A stretch of DNA of 64,000 bases from Haliotis rufescens. Taxonomy: Eukaryota. The notes beneath the pieces are model-generated. The model ran no database searches. It was not told the DNA's origin and saw only the letters and a list, made by a program, of their open reading frames with translations. Position numbers and translations under genes: made by a program. The stretch is from assembly GCF_023055435.1 (NCBI RefSeq), contig NW_025963779.1, forward strand, positions 16,368,001 through 16,432,000. Direction: 5' to 3'. Shown here in pieces: positions 33,957 to 61,123 of the stretch (the stretch's first letter is position 1; every line of letters begins with the position of its first letter).

Positions 33957-36900
33957 CTACATCTTGGGCGCCTCGTCCTCATCATCAAGCGTGATGACGT
34001 CGTCAGTGGCCTTGACGTTGCGCATTTCTTCTACGCAGGCTTCCATTGGCTCATCAGCCTCATTGTGACGGCGGCAGCGTCTGCGAGGGCACTGTGCCTG
34101 ACCATGACCTTCACCTCGAGGGTGACCCCTGAATCGACCTCTGCCGCCCTCTCTAGGGTCACCTCGTCCATCTTCCCATCCGGCAAAACCCATGTCGTTC
34201 CATGGTTCCATTTCACTGAAGTGTTCCCCTCGCCTCTTGCAACCTCCACGACCACAACGACCACCACGTCTCCCCCATCCTCTTCGTTTCCAACAACCTT
34301 CACCCCAGGCATAAGGATGCGTTCCCATCATGCCCCAGAACTGCATTGGGCCACCTGCAAACATACCAGGGTGGCCGAGAAATGGCGGGGGCATGTCCTC
34401 ATCCGAGGATCCGAAGATTCCATCCTCTTCGGTCTGGGAGTCTTCAACATGGTGTCGATCGTGATTATGACATTTTCGGCTTCCCTTCTTTCCTCTGCCA
34501 CACTTTCTCGCTCCTCTTTGGCCATCTGTCTTCATTTCTGTATCTGTCAAATACAAAAACAAGAATAGGGTCAAACCATACAGACCAAGGTAGAAGACAC
34601 AACCATCATGTATATGGGTTTACGCAATATCGCGGAGGGTGACACCAGAAATGGGCTTTGGACATTTGACCCATGTTGGGAACTGAATCAGGGACTTTGG
34701 TTTGACGAGCGAATGCTGTACCTGAACCGACAAGCCTACTCCGCCGCTACCCATTGGGAGTAACACAAAACCTTTAGTCAGTACTAGTTACGATTATTCT
34801 GAAGACATGGCTCACTGGACCACTGCCACGTAGCACTGATGAACTAATTTGTCTGACCGTCAAGATTGCATTGTTCTTACATTGCACGGACGTCGAACAA
34901 TGGTACTTTGGCCCATGCAGGGTACACATACACGATCATCTCGCCAACCTCGGTTATATCAAAACAGGGAAGAGGCGGTGGGATAGCCTACTGGTTAAAG
35001 CGACGGCTCGCCGTGTCAAAGAACTGGGTACCAAATGGGCAAAATGATTAACGCCCATGTTGGTGTCTCTTGCTATGGTGTAGCGACATAACTGTCTTTA
35101 CCAAAGTGGCAACCCATACTCAATCACTTCACACTCGGTCTACCTTGTCCCTCCAACTGTAGGAGACGGAAACTCAATCCACAGATAACATGGATCAACT
35201 TGTTTGTGTAAAGTGGACATTAGTGATTGTATGTTGTTGTAAGTGAGAGTGAGATAGGATACCTACCATTACCATCAGCAGTGCCCTCTCTGACCTCAGG
35301 TGCATCTTCCGTAGTTTTCGCTTGGGCGTCATTATCTGCTGTGTTGTCGGACTCTTCACCGGGAGTGGCCTCCCCTTCAGTCCTTGACTCATGGCACTGA
35401 TTCTTCTTCTTCCAGCGTTTCATGCGCTTCATCCATCGGTGAAAGTGAGGAGGGGCCATTCCTTCCATTGGCTGCAAAATTGTGTGTAAATTGATCACAT
35501 CCCGTGAGAAGGGTGCATGTTGAATAAATACAGGTACACGAGAAGATGGCACGGTGACTTCGGTCAAAATGATACTTCGCGGGTGTTTATTCGAGAGGTA
35601 TTCAATTTATGTTTAGGATTAGTCATGATTAATAACTAAAGGATTAGTCATGATTAATAGCAACTCACCATTCTGCCTGCACCTCGCATGCCACCCATTC
35701 TGCCCCACCCTCGGCCCCACCCTCGGCCCCACCCCTGCATCCTCGGGTCAAAGTCCCATTCATCCTCCTCGGATACGGCAGGAGAGACATCTGGCAAAAA
35801 AAGATCATTCATCAAAAGATTAGTTTGATATGGCAGTACTTTGACTCATTCTTCAAAGTATTACTATTGCCTATCATCATTATTATCATCATCAACAACA
35901 ACAAAAACAATACCAAAATCACCACAGTCATCAACAGTATCAAAGTAAAAAGAAATATCTGATCAACGTTTAAGCTGGGGCACGTACTGAATACAGAGAC
36001 ACTGAAGCCCCCATACAATCTCTACATACACATACGTTATTTAGTTGTACGCGAGTCTGTTGATTGTATTGATCATAAATATCAATACACAAGATCAGTT
36101 GCAGATGTCCCAGGCCGCCATTACCATCAGCAGTAAATCACGACTGTGTATTATATTTATATTGAACAGAAAAATGTTCGTTTGTACCTCGGATGTAGAT
36201 TCTGAGGACGGAATCCTTGACGGAAGAGAGGGCCTCATCCATCTCCTGTTCCGTGGAGCACGTCACAAAGTCGCCTTCACCATCTGAAACAATAGCTCGC
36301 TTTCGTTAGCTTACGTGTTAATAATGAACGTGAACTTTGAGTACGAATAAGGAACAGAAACTGCACACACATGCTGCGACAACTGTCGCGAACTCGAAAG
36401 ACAAGTGAGATGGTTAAAAATAGAATAAAAATAAAACGGTCGACTGACTACCCAGAAATGATATTAACTGAGACATTGTCTGACGCTTTATACAGTGAAA
36501 CCCCGTTAGTCTGGAAAACAAGCATTCCGGAGGATTTGGGATTAGAATGTGTACACATATTCAAAGGAGATAACTCATGGACTTGTTAATCCTACAATGG
36601 CGAAAACACGAGGAATGGAACCATTCGGATGAACGGGGCTTTGTCGACGTATACATCACACATGCATATCTATGTTATTGAAAACATAATCATGGGGAGA
36701 ATAATTTACGCATATATTTTCAAACCCATTTTCGTTACGCTAATTATTTCTGAAATATCAATTTAATGGTTTGTAAAGCATGTTTGTGATAGTAAGAGGA
36801 CTAACTAACTCCTTCGTCGGGCAGTTAATGGAAGACCTCGGGCTTCTGCAAATGATAATGCCCTGAAAAATAGCGTTACCCTTATAGTATCAATACAGGA

Positions 36901-37768
36901 ATTAAAATGTCTTTAAAAAAGTACAGAGAGTGAGTGAGTAATGTTTAACGAAACGGTATAAACAATATTCCCGATACATGAAACGGTCGGTAAATAATCG
37001 GGTCTGGACCAGACTAACAAGTTGTTGATATTATGAACACCCAACTCAGTAGGGGTAGATGACTTGAAAGAACCAAGTTGACCATTTAAAGGTATCATTA
37101 GGATACCGGAATAACAATCGCTTTGAACATTATACTGAATATGTGAGTGAATGTTGTTTCCCAACGCAATGAGTCGTCCCAAAGCATTATGGTTCAGTGT
37201 AGACTCAATGAAATACAGTAAAACCAACCCTGATATACTTCATAAATACATTCATGTCCAGTGACTGTTTTTTGTTTGTTAGTTGTTTAACGCCGCACTC
37301 AGCAATACTCCATCTATGGCGGCGGCCTGTACATAATCGAGTTTGGACCAGACAACCAGTGATCAATATTGTGAACAAAGCGCCACGCAATCGGGGTATG
37401 ATAACAATCAATCAGTAAAGTTATCGATCCTGACCACCCGATTCATTCAGTTGCCTCTTACGACCAGCATACGCTGCCTAGGGTTATATTCTAACCCTGA
37501 ATCCATCAGCAACTCTATACTGTTCATTATAATCATAGATGTTGTTATTATGAACACGATTAACACAAATACTTTCAAATAAACAGAAAAACTCACCTTT
37601 CCAGTACATGTTGAATGTCCCCGCCTCTAGTTGTTTGAACACCTGGGTCACCTTGTCGTGGACGAAGGTGTGTGTAGGGGCGGCGTCCTTAGGACCAGGG
37701 AAACGCCGGACCTCGGGTCTTCCTCTCCCCTCATGCTCATAAAACACTTTGACAACCACAGACTGCAT
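33957..37768 (-). CDS. PB1-domain protein A (SQSTM1/p62-derived, no ZZ/UBA), 5 exons, 393 aa
   Basis: Exons 37768-37597, 36283-36188, 35790-35669, 35471-35267 and 34543-33957 are all GT-AG and form an open 1182-nt frame. The N-terminus MQSVVVKVFY..PEVRRF..YWKDGEGDFVTCSTEQEMDEALSSVKDSVLRIYIR is a p62-type PB1. It is followed by GWGR repeats and an RG-rich tail. AATAAA lies at 33582-33577. Confidence 0.85.
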
Positions 37769-37899
37769 CGTGTTGTTCGGGCTGATTCTCAGTGACGATA
37801 AGTTTCAACAGGTGTTTGAATGTGAAATATCTTTTCAGCAGACGATAGAACTTCGATAGGCTTCTTTTTGTCTTGATTTCACGTCAGCAGGTAGCGGTA

Positions 37900-38120
37900 G
37901 AGTCGCTTGATTCTGTCAGCAAACCCAAACCCGGGCTTTTATACCCCATGTATGTTGTAATTTCTGGAAATAGAATCGAACGTTCGAAAACGTTCCGAGA
38001 ATGAGCTGGCACGTTTCAGACCGGTTGCATCAGGATCACGAGCGTCGATGAGTCATGGTAACGTGGATAGGACTTTCCGCGACACCTACGCATCGAAAAC
38101 GACAGTGACGTCACAATTTT
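37900..38120 (-). promoter_or_regulatory. Promoter of PB1 gene A: TATA, HSE, AP-1, kB-like, CRE
   Basis: TATAAAA at 37943-37937; HSE pentamers cGAAc gTTCg aAAAc gTTCc at 37977-37996 plus tTTCt gGAAa at 37961-37970; TGAGTCA at 38049-38055; AGGACTTTCC at 38069-38078; TGACGTCA at 38106-38113. Confidence 0.7.
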
Positions 38121-38379
38121 GGCTGAGTGCCAAGTAAATCAACTGGTCGTGGTATCCAACTGCCTTGTTATAAAAAGCAATTAAAACATTATCCGAGACA
38201 GATAAATGTGTGTTAATCAATCTGTTGACGCACCAGCATTATTTCAAACGTTTGCATTTAATGAACGTACATGTGTGTTGCTTTAAATGTGCATATATCT
38301 TCATGTAGATTTAAGTTGAGTGTTGGCTCAGAGCCAAGGAATGTGAACTGGTCCGGCCCAAGAACCATTCGGAACGGAG

Positions 38380-38570
38380 CTCGCACGTCACGTGACTTTG
38401 TCAATCGACCCGGGTCCCGTGATTCTCACGCAACCGGTCCGAAATAGTTTGAGACGGCCCGAAACCGGTCCGGAGAACGTTTCAGAACGGTTTGATTCTA
38501 TTAATAGTAATTGACATCACACATTTTCTGGTATATAAACCCCTAGTTTTACTGACAGAATCACTCCTCC
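38380..38570 (+). promoter_or_regulatory. Promoter of PB1 gene B: CLEAR/E-box, degenerate HSE, TATA, Inr
   Basis: Perfect GTCACGTGAC at 38387-38396; aGAAc gTTTc aGAAc at 38474-38488; TATATAAA at 38532-38539; Inr-like TCACTC at 38561-38566, about 30 bp after the TATA. Confidence 0.7.
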
Positions 38571-38744
38571 GGCACGCTCTATACAGCTATACTGAAGTTA
38601 CTACGCCAGCTGCTGAACAAAGACTCAATTGTCGTCTGCTAAAGAAATAAGACCGGTCTGAATAGCGAATACAGATTGCTACACTTGAGAATCCTTCAGT
38701 TCTCCCACTGCTGTACGACATTTCCTGTCCAGAGAAATCCCAAG

Positions 38745-41700
38745 ATGCAATCCTTGGTGATAAAGATGATTTATGAGCGGCAGGGCAACGCGACTCCTGA
38801 GATCCGACGTTTCCCTGTCCCCGATAACGCCGCCCTCAGTTACACCTTCATCAACGAGAAGGTGATGCAAGTGTTTCCACACCTTGATGCGGACACATTC
38901 ACACTGGGCTGGACAGGTATACCTTTTCCTCTTTATTACATAAATATACAACGTGGTCGTTGGACTAAGTTCGAAAAATAACGACTACTTTAAGGATTAA
39001 TTCGTAAAATATATACCTTTTTAACGTATGTCCAATTGGTCATTGGTTGGATGTATTTCGTCGTGTCATTACTGACATATGTTAATATATATTGGAGTAT
39101 TTTCTACTTAATGTTTAAATAAAACGCTTTGTAATCATCGCCATGAAAAACATGCAAATATTGTTTTCTTATATGTCCAATTTAGTTTTGTTATTGTGTG
39201 ATGATTTTAAGAGACAGTAGAACATTCTTAAAAACATACTGGTCGTATTTTCTTAACAGATGAAGATGGAGATTCAATAACTTTCTCCTCAGAGGAAGAG
39301 CTCAAAGAAGCTCTTAGCAGTGCCAATGATTCCGTTATGAAAATCGTCGTCAGAGGTGAGATGATTTCCTATTAACATAAAGAGCACAAAATCGATTTAT
39401 ATATTGCCTAGTGTGTTCAATTAATAGCTTCTAAGGAATCTTCGTTTTACTGTTTAATGTAAACTGTTCTTTAAAAAAAACTTGATATGTTCAAGTAACA
39501 ATGAAATGATGTCGGTGTGCGACTTCGTCTCTGAGCCTTCACGTTGAATAAGATAAATGCATAGATTATGTGAGCGGCAAAACGAACTAGCCCGTCTGCG
39601 CAGGGCCACATACCGAGAGTGTACACAGTGTGACCTGAATAGTGTCCCTGTATTGAGACTTGTTTCTGTGCCTGACAGAGCACGACGTGACAAATAGAGC
39701 TGAAGGAGTTACCTCCCTTGACGCTAATACTTGGCGCAGATCTCGTGTGTTTGGGAAAGGAGCAGATGCTGGAGGATACAGAATGATGGAGACGGTAAGT
39801 TCAGATATTTCTTTTGTAGTTAATAACCATATACTATTTTAGAAAAATGTTTTCTTGGCTTAATAAGCTCAACTATAAATCCTTTGCCATAAACAGGTCT
39901 GAACATAAATTTTATAGATCTTTCTCGTTCTGTTCATATACTTCGTATAATGTCAGTACTAAATTAACCCTAAATGTCATATAGAGTTTTTATTCAAAAT
40001 TAATCCATGACGTCGTTCTTCTTGTAGAAGGACGTTCAACCCCGTCACTCCAGACGTCTGATGAGAATGGCCAGGAAGATTCCACAACAGGGACGGGAAG
40101 ATGCTGGCCAAGTCGATGCCAATCCAACCCTTGTTGATGGACAAGTCACGAGAAACTACAGCAGTAAGTCATCTCCCAAGTTATGAATATTATTATAAAA
40201 TTAGTTGTTTGATAGGCAATTATTGTAAAATGAATTGTTTCATAGGCAATTATTGTAAAATAATATTGTTTGATAGGCAATTATTGTAAAATGAACTGTT
40301 TGATAGGCTATTATTGTAAAATGAATTGTTTGACAGGCAATTATTGTAAAATAATATTGTATGATAGGCAATTATTGTAAAATGAATTGTTTGACAGGCA
40401 ATTATTGTAAAATGAATTGTTTGATAGGCAATTATTGTAAAATGAATTGTTTGATAGCCAATTATTGTAAAATGAATTGTTTGATAGGCAATTATTGTAA
40501 AATAATATTGTATAATAGGCAATTATTGTAAAATTAATTGTTTGACAGGCAATTATTGTAAAATGAATTGTTTGATAGGCAATTATTGTCAAATGAATTG
40601 TTTGATAGGCAATTATTGTAAAATGAATTGTTTGATAGGCAATTATTGAAAAATAAATTCTTTGATAGACAATTTTTGTAAAATGAATTGTTAGATAGGC
40701 AATTATTATAAAAATGAATTGTTTGATAGGCAATTATTGTAAAATGAATTATGAGATAGGCAATTATTGTAAAATGACGAAAGAAGTTGTAAACGCGTTC
40801 TGTTGTCGGTGTCATTGATATCAATTTAGGATTGGTCATGTGGCGTTTCATATTTACGTGTATTTTCAAAATAGAAATGTATGATGGCTGAACTACGTCA
40901 TTTTCGATGGCATTTAATATTACTGATGATAAAACAGTGGTCAACTTACCAGGCAGAAAAACATGATGTCTGACGTCTGAAATTAGATAATACATGTTTT
41001 CCAGATTGTCCTGTTAAAGTAAGCTGCCATCTTGTTCCCCTGACTTCAGATGTACAGTCAGTCACATGTTATTTATTTCAGATGCAGGCGGATCCAGACG
41101 AGAGTTCTGTAGAAATGGTCGCCGATGGCAGTTGCAAGCATCCTGTGGGCACAATGGTGCTGGAGCTGGCCCTGTGACTGGCTGGCGTCATCGTCGACGT
41201 CAGCACATGTCAAACCCTACAGCCGATGAAGATACAGCTACGGAGCAGGGGACCCCAACGAGAGTCTGTGGGAGGCGACGCCAGAGAGAACTGGGCGGGC
41301 TCTGTCAGCGTGATGGGGCTGAAAGCGATGGTACATCTCCAAGGCCACGTTGGTGGAGGCGGGTGATGCAAGAAGAACGTCCCTGCCCGCAGAAGGAGAA
41401 TGTCATTGATGGTACGTCTCCTTCGAATTCCTGTGGGCAACGTTGGAGAAGGCGGGTGATACAAAAAGATGGTCGCCTCCAGCGTGACGAGACTACCGGG
41501 AAATGTGGAAGACCTTGGAGAAGGCGGATGATGACAGGACTCGAGTATCAGCGTGGTGATTCAACAGGAGACGATCTCTGTTTGAACCCACATTGGAGAT
41601 CAATGCAAGCAGGCCGGGCTTCAAGATACGCCATGGGTACTGAAGGTGTCACTATGCCTCTCTGGTATTATGGATGTCATGGAGCCAGGAAATCCTTCCC

Positions 41701-43009
41701 TGTTGGCTGCAGAGGATTTCAAGAATCCTGTAGTGATCGCGCTGGTCAAGACGGACCAGGTAGACGCACCATGGGCCACCATGAGGTCAGTGGGAAAAGG
41801 TGGCGTCGTACAAATGAGCCTCGTTTTGGAAGATGGTCCAGGCGAGATAGTAAGACTGAAGATGAACATTACATCAATAGCCACTGCACTGATAGCAGCT
41901 TTGCCAGCTGTCAGCGTCGTCGTGTTCGTTGCACGGGTGTCTCGGGAAACACGCCTGGATGTAAGTGTTCGAATGAGGAAAGCTGTCTGAACAAACGAGA
42001 CGTAAAGAATCTCCATAGATTTGAGAGTTGTCCTAAACGTCGCGTGAGATTAAGCGATGATGTGTCAGAGTCACACGATAAGAACACCAATGGCAGAGTG
42101 GAAACAACCCGTGGAAACAAATGGCAGAGAGCATTCGGACCTCACATCAGACGATGCATCCGTCGCCAGGGGAGGACGATGGAGGGAAGAGCCAACAGGG
42201 AAATCTCAGAAGATGTGATGCGTGGTCAAATGAATGACGTGATGCCAACATGCAATGAAGCGGGCTGTGACATGCAGAGAGGCAAAATGTGCAGGAGCCA
42301 CAGAAGAGGACCAACGTTCAGAACTCGTCGTCTTCGTATTGTAAGACGCATGCGTCGCTTGCGATACCTTCAAGGCCTTAAGGGATTTTATAAACACCCA
42401 TATCCAAGAATGCACGGACACAGAAGAAGACCGGTCTTGAAGACCTGCCGTCGTGGTCTTTGTCTTCATCTGAGTGGAACTGGAGCTAAAGTTGGAAGAG
42501 TATATGGATTTGGAGGTAAACGAGGTGGCTGCCACATTGGAATAGGCCAGCATCTGGCAGAGACAATCAACCGTCAAGTTACTTCATGTTATGCGTCAAA
42601 CTCTCACAAATTTAAAATGGGTGACAATGGAACAAACTGCAGAAATCATGAGAGGAAGAGTATTCATCACGTCATGGGCAGATCCTGGGGTCGTCAAAAG
42701 GCTTATCCTGGAGGGTCTGGAAAGGATGAAGGGGGATTGGCCTGTCAGATGAAGCACGCCTGTGACGGCCCTGAAGATGTTGGGACACAAACCCCTTTTA
42801 AGCTCACTTTCCATGAAATGAAGAGACTGTGCCTGATGAGAAGAATCCTTCAAAAGGAAAGAAAAAGGCAGTTCCGTATAAGACAGCTATTTGCCAGCCG
42901 CTGTGGACAAGGACAGTTGTCAAAGAGACCTGTGATGAAGGCGTGGGGAGGCAAGGCAAGCACCTGTACCCACGGTGGCGATAGGGTGTTGAGAATGGCC
43001 TATTTGTAA
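38745..43009 (+). CDS. PB1-domain protein B (SQSTM1/p62-derived) with long Arg/Gly/Cys-rich tail, 5 exons, 815 aa
   Basis: Exons 38745-38916, 39260-39355, 39679-39794, 40028-40163 and 41082-43009 are all GT-AG and form an open 2448-nt frame. PB1 reads MQSLVIKMIY..PEIRRF..WTDEDGDSITFSSEEELKEALSSANDSVMKIVVR. Exon 1/2 sizes (172, 96) and intron phases (1,1,0,1) equal those of gene A. The last exon is the 647-aa ORF of the track. Confidence 0.85.
40190..40776. repeat. 30/31-bp AT-rich minisatellite, about 19 units, in intron 4 of PB1 gene B
   Basis: GGCAATTATTGTAAAATGAATTGTTTGATA repeated head to tail. Confidence 0.96.
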
Positions 43010-45278
43010 GACACTAAAAAGCTTGCTACTATCCGTTGCAGAATGTAGTTACATACTGATGAAATCCTTGTCGATGACAGATGATTTTAGATGCTGAGGA
43101 ATCTATGGGAAGTATATGTTGTCCATTATATACGGTTTTGGTTACATTAAATACATAATTTATGTTGTCCATTATTTACGGGTTCGGTTACTATTTTATA
43201 TGTTGTCCATTACATACGGTTTTGGTTACATTAAATATATAATTTATGTTGTCCATTATATACGGGGTTGGCTAAGTTGTTTTCTTTCTGTACAGTGTGT
43301 GTGAAAAATGTGAACTTGGTGCTATCATGTAATATACAAATGATCATTTTGAATAAGAGTTATTTCGTCCCATTTGTTTCCGCTAGTTTTACATATTAAT
43401 GAAATTATCTAACGTCTTGTCATTTTGTGTTTCATATAAGTTAGTGATTATGATAATACAGATGCATATGGGTCAAGATATTATGTTTTTGACAGGTTTT
43501 TTATCATCTGTGTTCAGAATTAATACATACAGGTTAGGTTGGTTGAAACATAATTTTTGTAATAGGAACGTATTTGTGTTCATGTTATTAAAATGTTGGA
43601 CGTTTCATATAGTATAATTTTACTTATTTCTGAGCTGAGCATATTTCTGGAGTCTCAGCTGCACTCAGCAATGATGGCCTATATATACTACTCAAAATAT
43701 GTTAAAGAATATCCGATGTTTTCATATGACTATAGTTAGTCTGTCATGGCTGGCGGGTACTCCAACACACAGCCTTCCATTTGTGGGTGTTCTTTAACTT
43801 AGTTTGAGTCGTTTAAATGAAGCACTAATGAAATAGGGGAGCCAAGGTTCATTTTGATATTCGGCAAAAGTGTCAACAAAGACATTTTACTTAGTTGTAC
43901 GCGTTGTTGCTTTCGTCACAGTCAAACTAGTGGTTGAAAGCATGAGCCAAGAGCCACGCCGTAAGGCCATGGTGGCACACCACCGGCCAGATGAAACATT
44001 TTGCAATCACCTGATCCTCATTTTCGACTATTGTGATTAGCATGGTGAGCTGAGGATCTATTCTGACCCATAATCCAAGTAAGGGACCTGCCGCATTGAC
44101 ACACATGAACGAGTTTTACAAATGCATGCGATCAACTATACAGTTATATCACTACAGCCTTTACATACATGAGTCTAGAGTTAGTGAGTGAGCTGGGGTA
44201 AACGCCATTGTGAACAATGTTTCAGGGTTTTTTAGAGTGTCGCCACTGTTGAACTAATGTTGGAAGAGGACCAATAAGATGCAGACCCTAGATGTACTTT
44301 GGGGAAACCCAAGTGTACGGGTGTGGAAAGTCTGGAATCAAACCCACGATCATCGGATCATAGCATGTTTTAGGAAAGCACAGCCCTGCTCGGTCACCAG
44401 AAGAACTGCTGAGCCAACCATCCTCTCTGTCGGATTGCAGTGGCACACAATCAGTGAGGTTACAAGTTGTAACAAAGACTTCCGGAACATAAGAATGATT
44501 ATGTCCTTGGCTTGTACAATGAAAGACGGTGGGTTAGTCTGGTGGTTCAAGCGTTCTCTCGTCACACCGAAGGCCCGGTTTCGATTCCTCACAAGGGTAC
44601 ATTGTGTGAAGCCCATTTCTGCTGACGTCCTCCACTGTGCTATTGCTGGAATAGTGTTGACAACGGCGTAAAACCACACTCACTTACACTCACTCACTCA
44701 CTTACTCACAAGATGTCGTACACAAGTCACGAAGGTAGAGATCAGGTTAAATGTAGCAGGTATTTGCGGTACGTTTGTGGGGATGTGTGCGTCGGGATGG
44801 GCGTTTGAGGGGAGCCAATGTTCATTGTACTCAGGAGATTATCTAAATAAACGTATTAATTTAAAATTAATACATACAGGTTAGGTTGGTTGAAACATTA
44901 TTATTGTAACAGCAGCGTATTTTTGTTCATGTTATTAAAATGTTGTGAAGTGTCATAACGTATAATTTTACTTATTTCTGAGCTGAACATTTTTTTTCTG
45001 GAGTCTCACCTGCACTCAGCAATGATACCTTATGTATACTACTCAAAATATGTTAAAGAATATCCGATGTTTACATATGACTATAGTTAATCTGTCATGG
45101 CTGGCGTGTACTCCAACACACAGCCTTCCATTTGTGGGTGTTCTTTAACTTAGTTTGAGTCGTATAAATGGAACGTGGACGTGGGTCGGGGTGGGTGTTC
45201 GAGGTGAGCAAAGGGGATGTACGCGTCGGGATGGGTGTTTGAGGGGAGCCAATGTTCATTGTACTCAGGAGATTACCT

Positions 45279-45441
45279 GACTGACTGAGTATGGTTTTAC
45301 GCCGATTTTAGCAATATTCCAGCAATATCACGGCGGGGGACACCAGAAATGGGCCTCACACATTGTACCCATGTCGGGAATCGAACCCGGGTCTTCGGCG
45401 TGACGAGCGAACGCTTTAACCACTAGGCTACCCGACCGCCC
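45279..45441 (-). mobile_element. tRNA-derived SINE, family 1
   Basis: TSD CAGGAGATTACCT at 45266-45278 and 45442-45454. The site is empty in the inverted duplicate near 59855. Confidence 0.9.
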
Positions 45442-46795
45442 CAGGAGATTACCTAAATAAACGTATTCGTGTATGTACATCGAGATTTACACCAACCAAT
45501 CAGTATCATGAAATTACTTTAATCAACATGCACATGACAAAGTATACAAGCAGGTACATATAAGCATCTAGCTACATCGCATTCTGTGGTAAAATCAGAA
45601 CTTCACATATTAAAAATACAGCATAAACACTACATTATTATGAACTTTTCTATTGATGAAGAAATAACAACGTCAAAAGCGTTATCAAAAATGATTTTGA
45701 AACCAATTATATGCCTCTAGTTAATCACACGCGTTAAAAGCGTTATCGAAAAAGATGTTTCAATGATTTTGAAAACAATTATATGCCTCAAAAAGTCCTA
45801 AGTCACTTATTAGGAACAAAAGTAGAACACTTGTTTTTTAATGTGACAACAACAATAAATCATCAAACAAAAATATCTACTACGCATGTTCAGATTCAAA
45901 ACCTATTATACCTCATTTATTTCAGATTCTAGAGCAGAATCGATGCTCATGATGTTAATCATTGGATTGTTTGTTTGTTTGTTACGACAAGCATTGTCTC
46001 TTTTTACGGCAAGCATGGGCTGTTGAAAAACTAACCCATTCTAACCCGAATCTTCAGGGTAAATATATTGCCGAGTGCTGCGTTAAACAACAAACAAACA
46101 AACAAAAGGAGAAACATTATTGCATGCGTTTTCATAATCATTTGGCAATAGCGCTACACCTTATCACAAAATGTATCGTCGATATGAGCAGTGTTTCGGT
46201 TACAATAACGACCTTGCGTGTCAGCTTGATGTGGGAGGAAAACCCGAAGTGATGCAGGTTTTGGACGTTTACCACTTTGGAGGGACCGAGGATCACGGGT
46301 GTGGTGCTGACAAACCTAGAAACAGAATCAGGGTCAACCTAAGAATCAAACCCATGATCACAGATTTCAGGCACGGCATAGATGACGAGACCACCCATGC
46401 CTCCTGTCACAAAATTTACATATAGTATTAGGTCAGTAATACTATTTGTCAGGGCAGATGATTTTTAATTCAATTCAATTATGGGTATTGAATTCAAGGC
46501 CAATGGCCAACATACAGTTTTAACACACAAAAACTGAAAAGGCAAAGGAAGTACAGCTGTAAATTGGCAATTTGTCTCTTTTTTTATAAAAATAATAATA
46601 CTTTTTACAGAATTTCATTAATTTCATACAACAGTTGTTCGCTTTTCACACATCAGATTCGAAAATGATTCGAAAGTACCGTTATCCAATATTTCTTTTG
46701 GGTTTCTTTCATAGCTCTTTATACAATGGACAAATGTTCATGAAACCTGATCTATTAGGTTCGGGCCAGAAGTACATGTTTTCCTTGCTGTACCG

Positions 46796-56151
<9,356 letters not shown>

Positions 56152-57289
56152 GATGCACTGTTTTAACTCGGAGTGTGCAAGTCACTCTCTCATTCATCGG
56201 CGCCTCAAGCTAAGGGAGAAAAGTGGTCAGGCTGGTTACCTGGGTATGCTGCGCTGGCGCAACACTGACAACCAAGCTCCTCACAGCGATTGTCCGTTCG
56301 CAGAGCTCGCTATACTATCGCGATGTTACCGAGAGTGTAACGAAGATGTCACGCGCTGGGAAGGAGTTTGCACTGATCCCATTCGTGACCAACACGCGTT
56401 ATTCCGGAACAAGCGAATAGCGAGGTTACGGAAAGAGGCGAGTTGTGACGAATGCACTGACCCATGGAATGACTGCACAATGGCCTCCTCCATTGGACAA
56501 AAAAACATGGCGGACACGACATGTATTTACTATATTTCGAAAGTGGTCGTCACATCTGTGAAATCAAAAGAATGACACACACCCCATTTTCAACAGTGAT
56601 ATGGGGATTAATATTTCTTGTCAGCTCACTGTTGTCACGAAATCGTACACAAAATATATGGAATTAAACGACCACGTCAATGAAATACCGTTAGCATCTT
56701 TATTTTAGCAAATGTGATAAAGCAAATGTCGCCGATTATGCCCCGTTTTTCTCCCATTGAAAAATGATGGATTTAGAGGAATTATTGTACGTCCAGTATA
56801 AATTACTATAAAATACAAACACTTATTTAATGATAGGGTCTGTCATTGGTTCTGATATTTGGCCTTGGATTTTATTCATATGAAAAGCTTTTTATTTCGC
56901 ATTTGTTTTCTTATTACACAATGAAATTAATCTTAAATAGATCTAATTATTTTGGAAAAAATAATTGATTACTTCCAGTCTAGTGATTTATTAACTCTGT
57001 GTGTGCTTGCAAAAATGTCGGGTCTAAATAGCAAAATGATAAAGAATATATTCATGATTTTTAATTAATTTGGTACAGTGGCATACACATTCATGTGTAT
57101 TTTATATGATGCTGCTACGGGTAAAACATTCCGATTTAAGTATATCAAAACTGTTTCAACCCAATTTTACCCTGCGATCCTTTGCTCTAACTACCTTAAG
57201 GGCTCACACAACGTTTTGTTCTCCTTTCCTGCACGATCGGCTCTGCCACATGCCCCTGGAGATGAACGAAAGTCAATCTTTCGTGAAGA

Positions 57290-57454
57290 GGGGCGGTTGG
57301 GTAGCCTAGTGGTTAAAGCGTTCGCTCGTCACGCCGAAGACCCGGGTTCGATTCCCGACATGGGTACAATGTGTGAAGCCCATTTCTGGTGTCCCCCGCC
57401 GTGATATTGCTGGAATATTGCTAAAAGCGGCGTAAAACAATACTCACTCACTCA
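57290..57454 (+). mobile_element. tRNA-derived SINE, family 1
   Basis: TSD CTTTCGTGAAGA at 57278-57289 and 57455-57466. Confidence 0.9.
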
Positions 57455-57471
57455 CTTTCGTGAAGAACGTA

Positions 57472-58560
57472 ATGGCGGAGATTCAAAATGTGACCCGCCC
57501 AGAAAACACAAGTCGTCTCCCTTAGCACGATGTGATCTAGTGATGGACACTCAAGAGTGAGTGAGTGAGTATGGTTTTACGCCGCTTTTAGCAATATTCC
57601 AGCAATATCACGGCGGGGGACACCAGAAATGGGCTTCACACATTGTACCCATGTCGGGAATCGAACCCAGGTCTTCGGCGTGACGACCAAACGCTTTAAC
57701 TACTAGGCTACCCGACCGCCCCTGGACACTCAAGAAAGAGACCTCTCACAGAACAAGTTCTCAATGATTCACATAAAAAGGTGAAAGAGATGACGAACTT
57801 CTCGATTTTATGCCTCGTATGTTTGACACTGTGAAATCCGAGATCTCGAATTTGAATCAGTCTTTCGTCCATCGGATGGACAGCTTAGAAAGGCGATTAG
57901 AAATACTGTCAGAGAAGATTGCTTCCTTAATCAGTAGCACGGTTAAGGTTGAAATGGACAATATTAGATCAGAATTTAAATCAAACTTAATACAGTTTGA
58001 AGACAGATTGGCAAAAATTGAAACAAGCTACGTTAGTGTTGTAGTGGTACCTTTTAGATCACGAAAATAGTAATTTTCGTAAAAATACAACAAAATACAG
58101 CTATGTACTAGTATATGTGAAACTTTCTTGCGTGGAAATAATGTACTTCATTTAGATAACTAGTGGGTTGGTAACATCAGAAAAAGTATTAACAAATTAG
58201 CTAAGCGCGGCTCTGGCGGGGTTGGCGTGTTTTTGCATGATCGATTGCTCAATATGTACAATGTGTCAATCATAGATGAAATGTATGACGATACGTTGTG
58301 TTTGAAACTGACATGCAAATCAGAGAGCACATTAGCCGCATGCAGCACGCTCTGTTTGTGTGTAACTTACCTGTCTCCAGAGAAATCGAAAAGGTCACAT
58401 GACCAAGAAGCTTATTTCACTCGTCTTTTATCATAGGTCTATGAATATCAAAATTCCACACAGCTGCTTTTAGACACCATAGAAAAAAACAGAGTGAAAT
58501 CTGTTTGATGAAAGGGATGCTAATGGTGCTTATCAGTCGTTTCTTGACCAAATAAAGTTA
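57472..58560 (+). mobile_element. Internally deleted LINE 5' relic (ORF1-like coiled coil plus APE endonuclease start)
   Basis: A coiled-coil-like stretch MFDTVKSEI..DRLAKIE is followed by ICETFLRGNN..RGSGGVGVF..LCVTYLSPE, typical of a non-LTR endonuclease N-terminus. Interrupted by a SINE. Confidence 0.65.
57557..57722 (-). mobile_element. tRNA-derived SINE, family 1
   Basis: TSD TGGACACTCAAGA at 57544-57556 and 57723-57735. The site is empty in the inverted copy near 63980. Confidence 0.92.
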
Positions 58561-59421: not shown

Positions 59422-61123
59422 CGATGGGGTTGGTTGTCGGACTGTATCATAGTTCTGCTTGTGTTTGTTTGTTTGTTGTTTAAAGCAGCACTCAGCAATG
59501 TTGTACCCCTGAAGTCCCAGGTTAGAATAGTTTTTCAACAACCCATGCTTGCCGTAAAATGAGACAATGCTTGTAACAAAAAAACAAGTGATCTAGATCT
59601 AGATCTTTCAAAATCATTTTCGATAATGCTTTTGTCGTTGTTATTTCTTTATCAATAGAAACGTTCATAATATTGTAGTGTTTATGCTAGTTTTTTAATA
59701 TGTGAAATTCTGATTTTACCGCAGAATGCGATGTAGCCAGATGCTTATATGTACCTGCTTGTATACTTTGTCATGTGCATGTTGATTAAAGTAATTTCAT
59801 GATACTGATTGGTTGGTGTAAATCTCGATGTACATACACGAATCCGTCTATTTAGGTAATCTGCTGAGTACAATGAACATTGGCTCCCCTCAAACACCCA
59901 TCCCGACGCACACATCCCCACAAACGTACCGCAAATACCTACTGCATTTAACCTGATCTCTACCTCCGTGACTTGTGTACGACATCTTGTGAGTAAGTGA
60001 GTGAGTGAGTGTGAGTGAGTGTGGTTTTACGCCGTTGTTAACACTATTCCAGCAATAGCACGGTGGAGGACGTCAGCAGAAATGGGCTTCACACAATGTA
60101 CCCTTGTGAGGAATCGAAACCGGGCCTTCGGTGTGACGAGAGAACGCTTGAATCACCAGACTAACCCACCGTCCTTCATTGTACAAGCCAAGGACATAAT
60201 TATTCTTATGTTACCACCTCTGGGATTCCGGAAGTCTTTGTTACAACTTGTAACCTCACTGATTGTGTGTGCCACTGTAATCCGACAGAGAGGATGGTTG
60301 GCTCAGCAGTTCTTCTGGTGGCCGGGCAGGGCTGTGCTTTCCTAAAACATGCTATGATCCGATGATCGTGGGTTTGAATTCCAGACTTTCCACACCCGTA
60401 CACTTGGGTTTCCCCAAAGTACATCTAGGGTCTGAATCTCATTGGTCCTCTTCCAACATTAGGTCAACAGTGGCGACACTCTAAAAAACCCTGAAACATT
60501 GTTCACAGTGGCGTTAACCCCAGCTCACTCACTAACTCCAGACTCATGTATGTTAAGGCTGTAGTGATATAACTGTATAGTTGATCGCATGCATTTGTAA
60601 AACTCGTTCATGTGTGTCAATGCGGCAGGTCCCTTACTGGGATTATGGGTCAGAATAGATCATCAGCTCCCCATGCTAATCACAATAGTCGAAAATGAGG
60701 ATCAGGTGATTACACATCCCCTTTGCTCACCTCAAACAAACACCCTACGGCGTGGCTCTTGGCTCATGCTATCAACCACTAGTTTGACTGTGACGTAAGC
60801 AACAACGCGTACAACTAAGTAAAATTCCTTTGTTGACACTAATTTGACACTAAAAATAAAACTTGGCGCCCCCATTTCATTAAGGCTCCATTTATACGAC
60901 TCAAACTAAGTTAAAGAACACCAACATATGAAAGGCTGTGTGTTGAAGTACCCGCCAGCCATGACAGATTAACTATAGTCATATGAAAACATCGGATATT
61001 CTTTAACATATTTTGAGTAGTATACATAAGCTATCATTGCTGAGTGCAGCTGAGACTCCAGAAAAATGTTCAGCTCAGAAATAAGTAAAATTATACGTTA
61101 TGACGCTTCACTACATTTTAATA

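What the first reader, a model, noticed from the sequence alone, without database searches (positions are those of the whole stretch)
33957..43009. Head-to-head pair of p62/SQSTM1-derived PB1 proteins that replace the ubiquitin/autophagy modules with RG/W-rich disordered tails
Seen: two divergently transcribed, intact 5-exon genes with ATGs 976 bp apart, identical exon 1/2 sizes (172, 96 nt) and identical intron phases (1,1,0,1). Both keep Lys7, the E(I/V)RRF basic cluster and the acidic OPCA motif (DGEGDFVTCSTEQEM; DEDGDSITFSSEEEL). Established: human p62 has MASLTVK...EIRRF...DEDGDLVAFSSDEEL...VKDDIFRIYIK, a type I/II PB1 that polymerises front-to-back into filaments. Seen: neither protein shows a ZZ finger, a KIR (DPSTGE), a canonical LIR or a UBA. 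A remnant shared motif sits in exon 4 (PPHFHRWMKRMKR vs PRHSRRLMRMAR). Inference: a lineage-specific, co-regulated two-protein system that can self- or co-polymerise, perhaps with true p62. It would display RNA-binding or condensate-forming tails instead of binding ubiquitin, acting as a stress-induced condensate scaffold or p62 modulator.
Basis: partly seen in the sequence, partly recalled or inferred. Interest (0 to 1): 0.85.

Follow-up and report, generated by a model that had tools for sequence, protein, structure and literature searches.

The report
Abalone p62-derived PB1-only gene pair
Red abalone carries a divergently transcribed pair of expressed genes that descend from the autophagy receptor p62 and keep its polymerising head, but have lost its zinc finger, LC3 motif and ubiquitin-binding domain in favour of fast-evolving charged, disordered tails, and their function is untested.

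Summary
The window is Haliotis rufescens chromosome DNA. Two head-to-head 5-exon genes lie at 33957-37768 (-) and 38745-43009 (+). Exons 1 and 2 are 172 and 96 nt in both, the intron phases are 1,1,0,1, and 976 bp separate the two ATGs.

- **Expression:** spliced transcript contigs from three studies confirm all four introns of gene A and introns 1-3 of gene B. The NCBI model of B (815 aa, "uncharacterized protein") equals my model.
- **Origin:** both PB1 domains keep K7, R21/R22 and the acidic OPCA residues. They form one clade inside mollusc p62 and share intron positions with three canonical PB1-ZZ-UBA p62 genes on another chromosome.
- **Losses:** ZZ, LIR and UBA are absent.
- **Tails:** both are predicted disordered. 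A is a blocky RG/GW-rich polyampholyte. B is a polycation of about +80 with WRRR repeats.
- **Distribution:** the pair occurs in four Haliotis species and nowhere else in 1.8 billion representative proteins. In H. rufescens it is duplicated as a 24-kb-arm palindrome. The scan noted that second pair separately (s1-814392).

Polymerisation, co-assembly with p62, RNA or condensate roles and stress induction remain inference. The one complex prediction gave no verdict. Verdict: a real, unnamed, lineage-specific variant of the p62 family, of moderate interest.

The parts
37597..37768 (-). Gene A exon 1 (172 nt): start codon and N-terminal half of the PB1 domain with K7 and R21/R22
   Evidence: (junction 36283|37597 in 3 runs)
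36188..36283 (-). Gene A exon 2 (96 nt): C-terminal half of PB1 with the OPCA acidic motif
   Evidence: (Pfam PB1 profile positions 50-81)
35669..35790 (-). Gene A exon 3 (122 nt): counterpart of the p62 ZZ exon with the finger missing. It holds a 12-bp tandem repeat that encodes W-G-R-G units.
   Evidence: last 9 nt plus donor identical to the canonical p62a ZZ exon end
35267..35471 (-). Gene A exon 4 (205 nt): conserved post-ZZ basic motif of p62 (predicted amphipathic helix), followed by an acidic stretch
   Evidence: E=1e-8 to H. asinina sequestosome-1-like; helix 134-151, pLDDT 69-78
33957..34543 (-). Gene A exon 5 (587 nt, terminal): RG/GW-rich blocks alternating with acidic blocks, then the stop codon. 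No UBA.
37769..38744 (.). Shared 976-bp divergent promoter. It has nested mirror-image blocks centred near 38236, a TATA-like box before each transcript start, and heat-shock-element-like arrays at 37957-37995 and 38475-38498.
   Evidence: (contig 5' ends near 37913-37924 and 38636)
38745..38916 (+). Gene B exon 1 (172 nt): N-terminal half of PB1
39260..39355 (+). Gene B exon 2 (96 nt): OPCA half of PB1
   Evidence: (PB1 23.7 bits)
39679..39794 (+). Gene B exon 3 (116 nt): remnant of the ZZ exon without the finger
40028..40163 (+). Gene B exon 4 (136 nt): degenerate copy of the post-ZZ basic motif
41082..43009 (+). Gene B exon 5 (1928 nt, terminal): 642-codon Arg-rich, Cys-studded polycationic tail with repeated W-R-R-R units
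   Evidence: (100% to P0001)
34676..58235 (.). Left arm of a large inverted duplication. Its right arm, at about 63471 to 87000 in window coordinates, carries the second pair B'/A'.

Best explanation
SHOWN. Genes A and B are expressed, spliced, lineage-specific paralogues of sequestosome-1/p62 in abalone. An ancestral p62 copy lost the ZZ finger from inside its third exon and lost the LIR and the UBA exon. It was then duplicated head-to-head together with its promoter, giving A and B. Much later the whole pair was duplicated again as a palindrome. Both genes keep a p62-type PB1 domain with both interaction faces intact: the basic K7, R21 and R22, and the acidic OPCA residues D58, D/E60, D62 and E71 (human D69, D71, D73, E82). 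This domain is under purifying selection, while the tails evolve fast but keep their bulk charge.

INFERRED. The PB1 heads polymerise front-to-back like p62, with themselves, with each other or with canonical p62. The polymer displays many copies of the tails. Without UBA and LIR the tails cannot read ubiquitin or ATG8. Instead they offer multivalent electrostatic contacts: RG/GW-rich and acidic blocks in A, and a charge of about +80 in B. These would bind polyanions such as RNA, or the acidic blocks of A. That would give ubiquitin-independent p62-like assemblies, probably switched on by proteotoxic stress through the shared TATA/HSE-like promoter.
For: - Splicing and expression.
- Identity of B with the NCBI model, and Haliotis-only orthologues.
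- Exhaustive profile search: only two strong clusters, both Haliotis, then canonical sequestosome-1.
- PB1 tree: A and B form one clade (97/89) nested in mollusc p62.
- hhalign to the p62 family: E 7e-31 for A and 6e-26 for B, over PB1 only.
- PDB sequence hits are all sequestosome-1, and the top 12 Foldseek hits are p62 PB1.
- Intron positions and phases 1,1,0,1 are shared with three canonical genes, including the 96-nt exon 2 and an identical end of exon 3.
- The post-ZZ motif is retained in A.
- Interface residues are conserved.
- dN/dS between the two pairs: PB1 0.09 (A) and 0.45 (B); tails 0.73 (B) and above 1 (A).
- Tail charge is +78 to +84 in three species although identity is only 45-50%.
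- AlphaFold2: PB1 is folded and the tails score below 50 pLDDT.
- Promoter: mirrored blocks, and 4 of the window's 19 HSE-like matches fall in its 976 bp.
- Background: PB1 domains with both faces polymerise, and tandem arginines are needed for filaments (PMC9582228).
Against: - No direct test of polymerisation was possible, and the review itself warns that a PB1 domain alone does not predict self-interaction.
- No data on RNA binding, localisation or induction. Contigs cannot give expression levels.
- The HSE-like sites carry one mismatch each, and the pattern is not enriched in the window as a whole.
- Low pLDDT with shallow alignments is weak evidence of disorder.
- B's 32 cysteines, many invariant across species, could mean metal- or redox-dependent structure rather than a simple polycation.
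- Tail dN/dS near or above 1 is also what relaxed constraint would give.
Confidence: 0.45

Rival explanations
1. A and B are modulators of canonical p62 rather than scaffolds in their own right. They insert into p62 filaments through their intact two-faced PB1 domains and dilute the ubiquitin- and LC3-binding valency. This would tune or restrain p62-body formation and turnover during stress.
For: The PB1 is closest to p62 and keeps both faces. UBA and LIR are absent. Three canonical p62 genes are available as partners.
Against: It does not explain why a 640-residue tail of +80 charge is kept open and charge-conserved in four species, or why A keeps many invariant tail motifs. A simple diluter could be a bare PB1 domain. 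No interaction data exist.
Confidence: 0.2
2. A and B act on nucleic acids or in the nucleus or nucleolus, or as a fast-evolving defence factor. The basic helix and basic patches kept from p62's linker would serve as nuclear localisation signals. The Arg-rich B tail would bind RNA, DNA or viral or microbial polyanions. The GW/WG runs of A could act as Argonaute-type tryptophan hooks. PB1 would only provide multimerisation.
For: The conserved basic helix and basic patches align with the p62 linker; that human p62 has its two NLSs in this linker is from my memory and was not checked here. B has a polycationic tail with W-R-R-R repeats whose number varies between species. Exon 4 shows dN/dS of about 3 in both genes, and copy number has changed recently. 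A has GW/WG runs.
Against: All of this rests on composition and short motifs. There are no localisation, binding or infection-response data. The dN/dS values come from few substitutions. The heat-shock-type promoter elements do not point to an immune trigger.
Confidence: 0.2
3. The tails are functionally empty. A and B are decaying p62 duplicates in which only the PB1 domain, or nothing, is still under selection.
For: Tail dN/dS is 0.73 in B and above 1 in A between the two copies. The B tail is only 45-50% identical across the genus. There is no Pfam, Atlas or fold match for the tails.
Against: Long open reading frames are intact in every copy examined: two copies of each gene in H. rufescens and H. 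cracherodii, and one of each in H. rubra and H. asinina. Net charge, many Cys, Trp and Arg columns and whole motifs are invariant. The genes are spliced and expressed in several data sets. PB1 dN/dS is 0.09 in A.
Confidence: 0.08

Closest known systems
Sequestosome-1 / p62 (Ref(2)P), canonical PB1-ZZ-LIR-UBA autophagy receptor
   Same: PB1 domain of the p62 type with both the basic and the OPCA face. The first four intron positions and phases, including the 96-nt exon 2, are the same. The post-ZZ basic motif is retained in A. RG/GW-rich linker composition is already present in abalone p62a. Nearest sequence and fold matches are p62.
   Different: The ZZ finger is deleted from exon 3. There is no LIR and no UBA exon. 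The terminal exon runs on into new tails: a blocky polyampholyte in A and a 640-residue polycation in B. The genes are arranged head-to-head with a mirrored promoter. The family is restricted to Haliotis.
NBR1 (paralogue of p62; PB1-ZZ-CC-FW-LIR-UBA)
   Same: It is a precedent for a p62-family duplicate that was remodelled by domain loss or gain and that joins p62 assemblies through PB1 (PMC9582228).
   Different: Metazoan NBR1 lost the basic PB1 face and is monomeric, whereas A and B keep both faces. NBR1 keeps ZZ, LIR and UBA. NBR1 PB1 structures rank well below p62 in the fold search, at 17-20% identity, and are absent from the PDB sequence hits.
RGG/RG-motif and Arg-rich disordered proteins that drive condensates
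   Same: Composition. A' has 23 RG/GR dipeptides, 16% Gly and 11% Arg arranged in alternating charge blocks. The B tail has 16% Arg and a net charge near +80. Both tails are predicted disordered.
   Different: This is a resemblance of composition only. No RNA-binding domain is present, no binding or phase-separation data exist, and the multimerising module here is a PB1 domain.

Membership tests
SQSTM1/p62 family | N-terminal PB1 domain that groups with p62 rather than with other PB1 families | tested here: met
   Tree: A and B form a clade nested in mollusc p62. hhalign E 7e-31 and 6e-26. All 9 PDB sequence hits are sequestosome-1. The top 12 Foldseek hits are p62 PB1.
SQSTM1/p62 family | ZZ-type zinc finger after PB1 | tested here: not met
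   No PF00569 hit on any exon at E<=1, on full-length B at E<=0.1 or on the A-type protein P0006 at E<=0.01. Canonical relatives score 31-53 bits. Exon 3 is 122 or 116 nt against about 230 nt in the canonical genes.
SQSTM1/p62 family | LC3-interacting region (acidic residues followed by W-x-x-L) | tested here: not met
   The regex screen finds none in A' or in the B tail and recovers the canonical abalone LIR as a positive control. This is a motif-level test only.
SQSTM1/p62 family | C-terminal UBA domain (Pfam UBA_5) | tested here: not met
   No hit on the exons or on full-length proteins. A whole-genome six-frame search gives only three UBA_5 hits, all on contig C583 behind the canonical genes. 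A exon 5 against p62 gives no significant BLASTP alignment.
SQSTM1/p62 family | Common descent shown by shared gene structure | tested here: met
   Phases 1,1,0,1 are shared. Exon 2 is 96 nt in A, B and canonical p62b. The end of exon 3 is identical over 9 nt plus the donor between A and p62a. Exon 4 starts with the same basic motif.
Type I/II (A+B) polymerising PB1 domains | Basic face: conserved Lys in strand 1 and tandem Arg (human K7, R21, R22) | tested here: met
   Invariant in A, A', B, B' and all orthologues.
Type I/II (A+B) polymerising PB1 domains | Acidic OPCA face (human D69, D71, D73, E82) | tested here: met
   Residues 58, 60, 62 and 71 are D, E, D, E in A and D, D, D, E in B, by alignment to human p62 structures.
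Type I/II (A+B) polymerising PB1 domains | Actual front-to-back homo- or hetero-oligomerisation | not testable with these tools
   This needs biochemistry or EM. Sequence alone does not predict it (PMC9582228).
RGG/RG-motif RNA-binding proteins | Clustered RG/RGG repeats in a disordered region | tested here: met
   A' has 23 RG/GR dipeptides, clustered at about residues 105-125 and 275-340, with pLDDT below 50. B is Arg-rich, but its Arg residues occur mainly in runs rather than RG repeats.
RGG/RG-motif RNA-binding proteins | Demonstrated RNA binding | not testable with these tools
   No assay is available.

The most novel reading that the evidence does not exclude
Abalone evolved a ubiquitin-independent branch of the p62 system. 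In this reading a heat-inducible, co-expressed pair of PB1 polymer subunits carries complementary tails, an acidic/RG polyampholyte and a polycation of about +80. Together they form a self-contained coacervate scaffold that captures RNA or other polyanionic cargo and couples it, through PB1 co-polymerisation, to canonical p62 bodies.
Probability: 0.12. Interest if true: 0.8.

Novelty: new variant of a known kind. Interest (0 to 1): 0.5.

Why it matters
p62 is usually described as a fixed module set: PB1 for polymerisation, UBA for ubiquitin and LIR for ATG8. Here evolution kept only the polymerising head, plus one linker helix, and attached very different charged tails. It then maintained both genes side by side under one mirrored promoter for the whole history of a genus. 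If the heads polymerise, these proteins are natural experiments in what a p62 filament does when its cargo-reading parts are exchanged. They could also explain stress or disease phenotypes in a farmed and endangered group of molluscs. At present they are only "uncharacterized protein" entries. I found no paper that names these loci, and none came up in three searches on abalone or mollusc sequestosome and PB1 paralogues.

Tried and rejected
- **Complex prediction.** I submitted A' residues 1-95 with B residues 1-95. The result was no verdict: score 0.27 against a mark of 0.34, the controls were not run, and my alignments were not used. It counts neither for nor against binding.
- **Vestigial UBA and LIR in A.** A multiple alignment placed a short M-G-F...G-W stretch of A under the UBA signature and a W-G-M-M stretch under the LIR. 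Pairwise BLASTP of A exon 5 against p62 finds nothing significant, hhalign aligns only PB1, and Pfam finds nothing. I rejected this as unsupported.
- **Shared exon-4 motif between A and B of this window.** BLASTP gives no alignment. I keep it only as positional homology.
The hydrophobic core is not conserved in H. asinina, so the case is weak.
- **ESM Atlas on the B tail.** No usable feature hit, and structure rows all have TM below 0.25.
- **HSE pattern.** It is not enriched over the window as a whole (19 matches against 19.8 expected). Only the local clustering in the promoter is notable.
- **The look-up of encoding contigs.** Head-to-head synteny in H. rubra and H. asinina therefore rests only on the same contig and, for H. 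rubra, on consecutive LOC numbers.
- I replaced it with tblastn of database proteins on the loci.
- **Joined spliced models.** Exons were searched by reference. For full-length work I used the database proteins P0001 (identical in length, and 100% identical to B over the exon-5 query) and P0093 (the paralogue A'; against window gene A, exon 1 is 98%, exon 4 is 85% and exon 5 is 94% identical by tblastn, and exon 2 is 31/31 and exon 3 is 33/36 with a 4-residue gap). The window's own gene A protein was not found in the protein collection.


Full report
**What is there**

The window is chromosome DNA of the red abalone, Haliotis rufescens: a protein encoded in the window is identical to an NCBI entry of that species, and the window is G000:C1:16368001-16432000. 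I rebuilt both gene models from the sequence.

- Gene A lies on the minus strand. Its exons are 37768-37597, 36283-36188, 35790-35669, 35471-35267 and 34543-33957, giving 393 codons.
- Gene B lies on the plus strand. Its exons are 38745-38916, 39260-39355, 39679-39794, 40028-40163 and 41082-43009, giving 815 codons.

Every intron is GT-AG. Exons 1 and 2 are 172 and 96 nt in both genes, the phases are 1,1,0,1 in both, and 976 bp separate the start codons.

**Are they real genes?**

Contigs of four public runs (three studies, two species labels) were laid on 34400-40200. They contain exactly the predicted junctions for all four introns of A and for introns 1-3 of B. The terminal exon of A is entered at 34543, and one 889-letter contig has some 540 further letters beyond the laid stretch on that side, enough to reach past the stop codon. 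The contig 5' ends lie near 37913-37924 for A and 38636 for B.

Intron 4 of B contains a 30-bp minisatellite and lay outside the stretch I laid. It is covered by the NCBI model P0001 ("uncharacterized protein LOC124149577", 815 aa), which has the same length as my model and matches its last exon 100%.

For full-length analyses I used database proteins: P0001 for B, and P0093 for A. P0093 is the product of the second copy, A'.

**What family?**

- **Pfam, exon by exon.** It finds only the C-terminal half of PB1, in exon 2 of each gene, and nothing else. On full-length proteins it finds PB1 alone.
- **Exhaustive profile search.** A profile of exon 1 of A, B and their second copies was searched against 1.84 billion representative proteins. 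Only two strong clusters came back, an A type and a B type, both from Haliotis. After a gap of sixteen orders of magnitude in E-value come canonical "sequestosome-1-like" proteins of abalone and other molluscs, a brachiopod and an echinoderm. Most full-length hits of that group have PB1 + ZZ + UBA_5.
- **Tree.** A PB1 tree puts A and B together (support 97/89) inside the lophotrochozoan p62 radiation.
- **Profile and structure comparisons.** Profile-profile comparison with the p62 family aligns the PB1 region at E 7e-31 (A) and 6e-26 (B), and nothing beyond it. A profile of the A family hits only sequestosome-1 chains in the PDB. The AlphaFold2 model of A' has a confident PB1 fold (pLDDT 84-92), and its twelve best structural matches are p62 PB1 structures, including the filament forms.

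**Where is the real p62, and how did A and B arise?**

The genome has three canonical p62 genes on another contig, C583. Two are 15 kb apart and the third lies 25 Mb away. Each has PB1 exons, a ZZ exon, an exon starting with the basic motif, a middle exon with the LIR, and a UBA exon. The only three UBA_5 matches in the 1.33-Gb genome are these. None lies on the contig of A and B.

The canonical genes have six coding exons with phases 1,1,0,1,1. Exon 2 is 96 nt, as in A and B. The ZZ exon ends with the same nine nucleotides and donor as exon 3 of A, and the next exon opens with the same basic motif as exon 4 of A (BLASTP E=1e-8).

So A and B come from a genomic duplicate of p62, not a retrocopy. 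The finger-coding part of exon 3 was deleted, leaving 122 and 116 nt against about 230 nt. The fifth exon now runs to a stop instead of splicing to a UBA exon. Both genes share these changes, so the changes most likely predate the A/B split.

The 976-bp spacer holds five collinear, nested mirror-image blocks centred near 38236. That fits an origin of the pair by inverted duplication, promoter included.

**Distribution**

- B orthologues: H. cracherodii (two), H. rubra and H. asinina. Over the exon-5 query they are 85, 75, 50 and 45% identical to B.
- A orthologues: H. cracherodii (two), H. rubra and H. asinina. They are 93, 92, 76 and 66% identical.
- In H. rubra the A and B entries have consecutive gene numbers and sit on the same contig (LOC124291392 and LOC124291393).
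- All entries are named "uncharacterized protein". No paper in the library names these loci, and three further searches on abalone or mollusc sequestosome and PB1 paralogues brought up none that describes them.

In H. rufescens the pair is present twice. Window 34676-58235 is an inverted repeat, 83-96% identical (mostly 87-95%), of the DNA at about 63471-87000 in window coordinates. The second pair, B'/A', sits there with intact reading frames. The scan had noted that pair separately (s1-814392).

**Anatomy relevant to mechanism**

The PB1 domains keep every residue known to matter for p62 front-to-back assembly. These are K7, R21 and R22 on the basic face, and the equivalents of human D69, D71, D73 and E82 on the acidic face (background in PMC9582228).

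Between the two copies, PB1 evolves under constraint (dN/dS 0.09 in A, 0.45 in B). The tails do not (0.73 over 757 codons in B, above 1 in A, and about 3 in exon 4 of both genes), although these figures rest on few changes.

Even so, the tails stay open in every copy examined, and they keep their physical character:

- **A tail.** It is close to neutral overall but built of alternating blocks of +9 and -6 per 30 residues. It has 16% Gly, 11% Arg, 23 RG/GR dipeptides, GW/WG runs and many motifs invariant across the genus.
- **B tail.** It carries a net +81, +78 and +84 in three species at only 45-50% identity. It has W-R-R-R units whose number varies between species and 32 cysteines, many of them invariant.

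AlphaFold2 gives both tails pLDDT below 50. The exceptions are the conserved basic helix of A (residues 134-151, pLDDT 69-78) and two low-confidence basic helices in B.

Abalone p62a has its own RG/GW-rich stretch. The tails therefore partly elaborate an ancestral linker.

**Promoter**

Each transcript start is preceded by a TATA-like box. Four of the window's nineteen one-mismatch matches to a three-unit heat-shock element fall in the 976-bp spacer, where about 0.3 would be expected, and they are placed symmetrically. This suggests joint stress induction but does not test it.

**Most likely mechanism**

The descent from p62, the losses, the expression and the conservation are shown. The rest is inferred: that the heads polymerise, that they co-assemble with each other or with p62, that the tails bind polyanions such as RNA or each other, and that the pair is stress-induced. 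I put 0.45 on that whole package.

The rivals are:

- dilution or tuning of p62 bodies (0.2);
- a nuclear, nucleic-acid or defence role with PB1 only as a multimeriser (0.2);
- functionally empty tails (0.08).

**Verdict**

This is a real, correctly described feature. It is a lineage-specific, structurally new variant of the p62 family, not a new kind of system. The genes are annotated only as uncharacterized proteins. Interest is moderate: it would be an attractive natural experiment for p62 biology, but no functional evidence exists yet.

**Limits**

- Expression levels cannot be read from contigs.
- The N runs at 53148-53532 were left untouched.

Noticed in passing
window 34676-58235 versus about 63471-87000 (window coordinates; loci L013, L017): A large palindrome with arms of about 24 kb, 83-96% identical (mostly 87-95%), and a centre near 60850. 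It carries the two PB1 gene pairs in mirror orientation. H. cracherodii also has two A and two B proteins on one contig, so the duplication probably predates the split of the two species.
   Followed up: partly
window 53148-53352 and 53393-53532: Two N runs inside the left palindrome arm. They are a reason to check the palindrome against long reads.
   Followed up: no
G000:C583:6919877-6939881 and C583:32484555-32489359 (L014, L015, L016): Three canonical PB1-ZZ-UBA sequestosome-1 genes. Two lie in tandem 15 kb apart, and one of these has a divergent PB1 and a long His/Pro-rich repeat before its UBA. Abalone therefore has an expanded p62 family even without A and B.
   Followed up: partly
window 40189-40777: A 30-bp minisatellite of 19.5 copies (89% matches) in intron 4 of gene B. 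It is also present in the second copy.
   Followed up: partly
window 35702-35734: A 12-bp tandem repeat (2.8 copies) inside exon 3 of gene A that encodes the W-G-R-G units. The paralogue A' is four residues shorter here, so the repeat number varies between the copies.
   Followed up: partly
window 34594-34787 and 36728-37503: Stretches inside introns of gene A with summed contig depths in the thousands to about 110,000 in all four runs, and many loose ends at their borders. They look like very abundant interspersed repeats (SINE-like), not part of the gene.
   Followed up: no
window 37597-38778: One contig of run X2 joins spliced exons 3-2-1 of gene A to an unspliced stretch that runs through the whole promoter into exon 1 of gene B, with 45 differences. 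It could be an allele, an upstream or antisense transcript, or an assembly chimera.
   Followed up: no
L017 (pair 2), protein P0095: NCBI predicts a second isoform of A' (318 aa) that starts inside exon 2 and so lacks most of the PB1 domain. It would be a tail-only product.
   Followed up: no
protein P0019 (Mya arenaria, 359 aa): A bivalve hypothetical protein with a p62-like exon-1 peptide followed by unrelated Cys/Pro-rich sequence, and no Pfam domain. It is either a mis-model or an independent remodelling of p62.
   Followed up: no
protein P0009 (66 aa, unnamed Logan contig): An exon-1 fragment of unknown origin with some B-like residues (E 5e-10). It could mark a B-like gene outside the named Haliotis genomes.
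   Followed up: no
window 43113-43271: 46/84-bp tandem repeats just downstream of the stop codon of gene B, probably in its 3' UTR.
   Followed up: no
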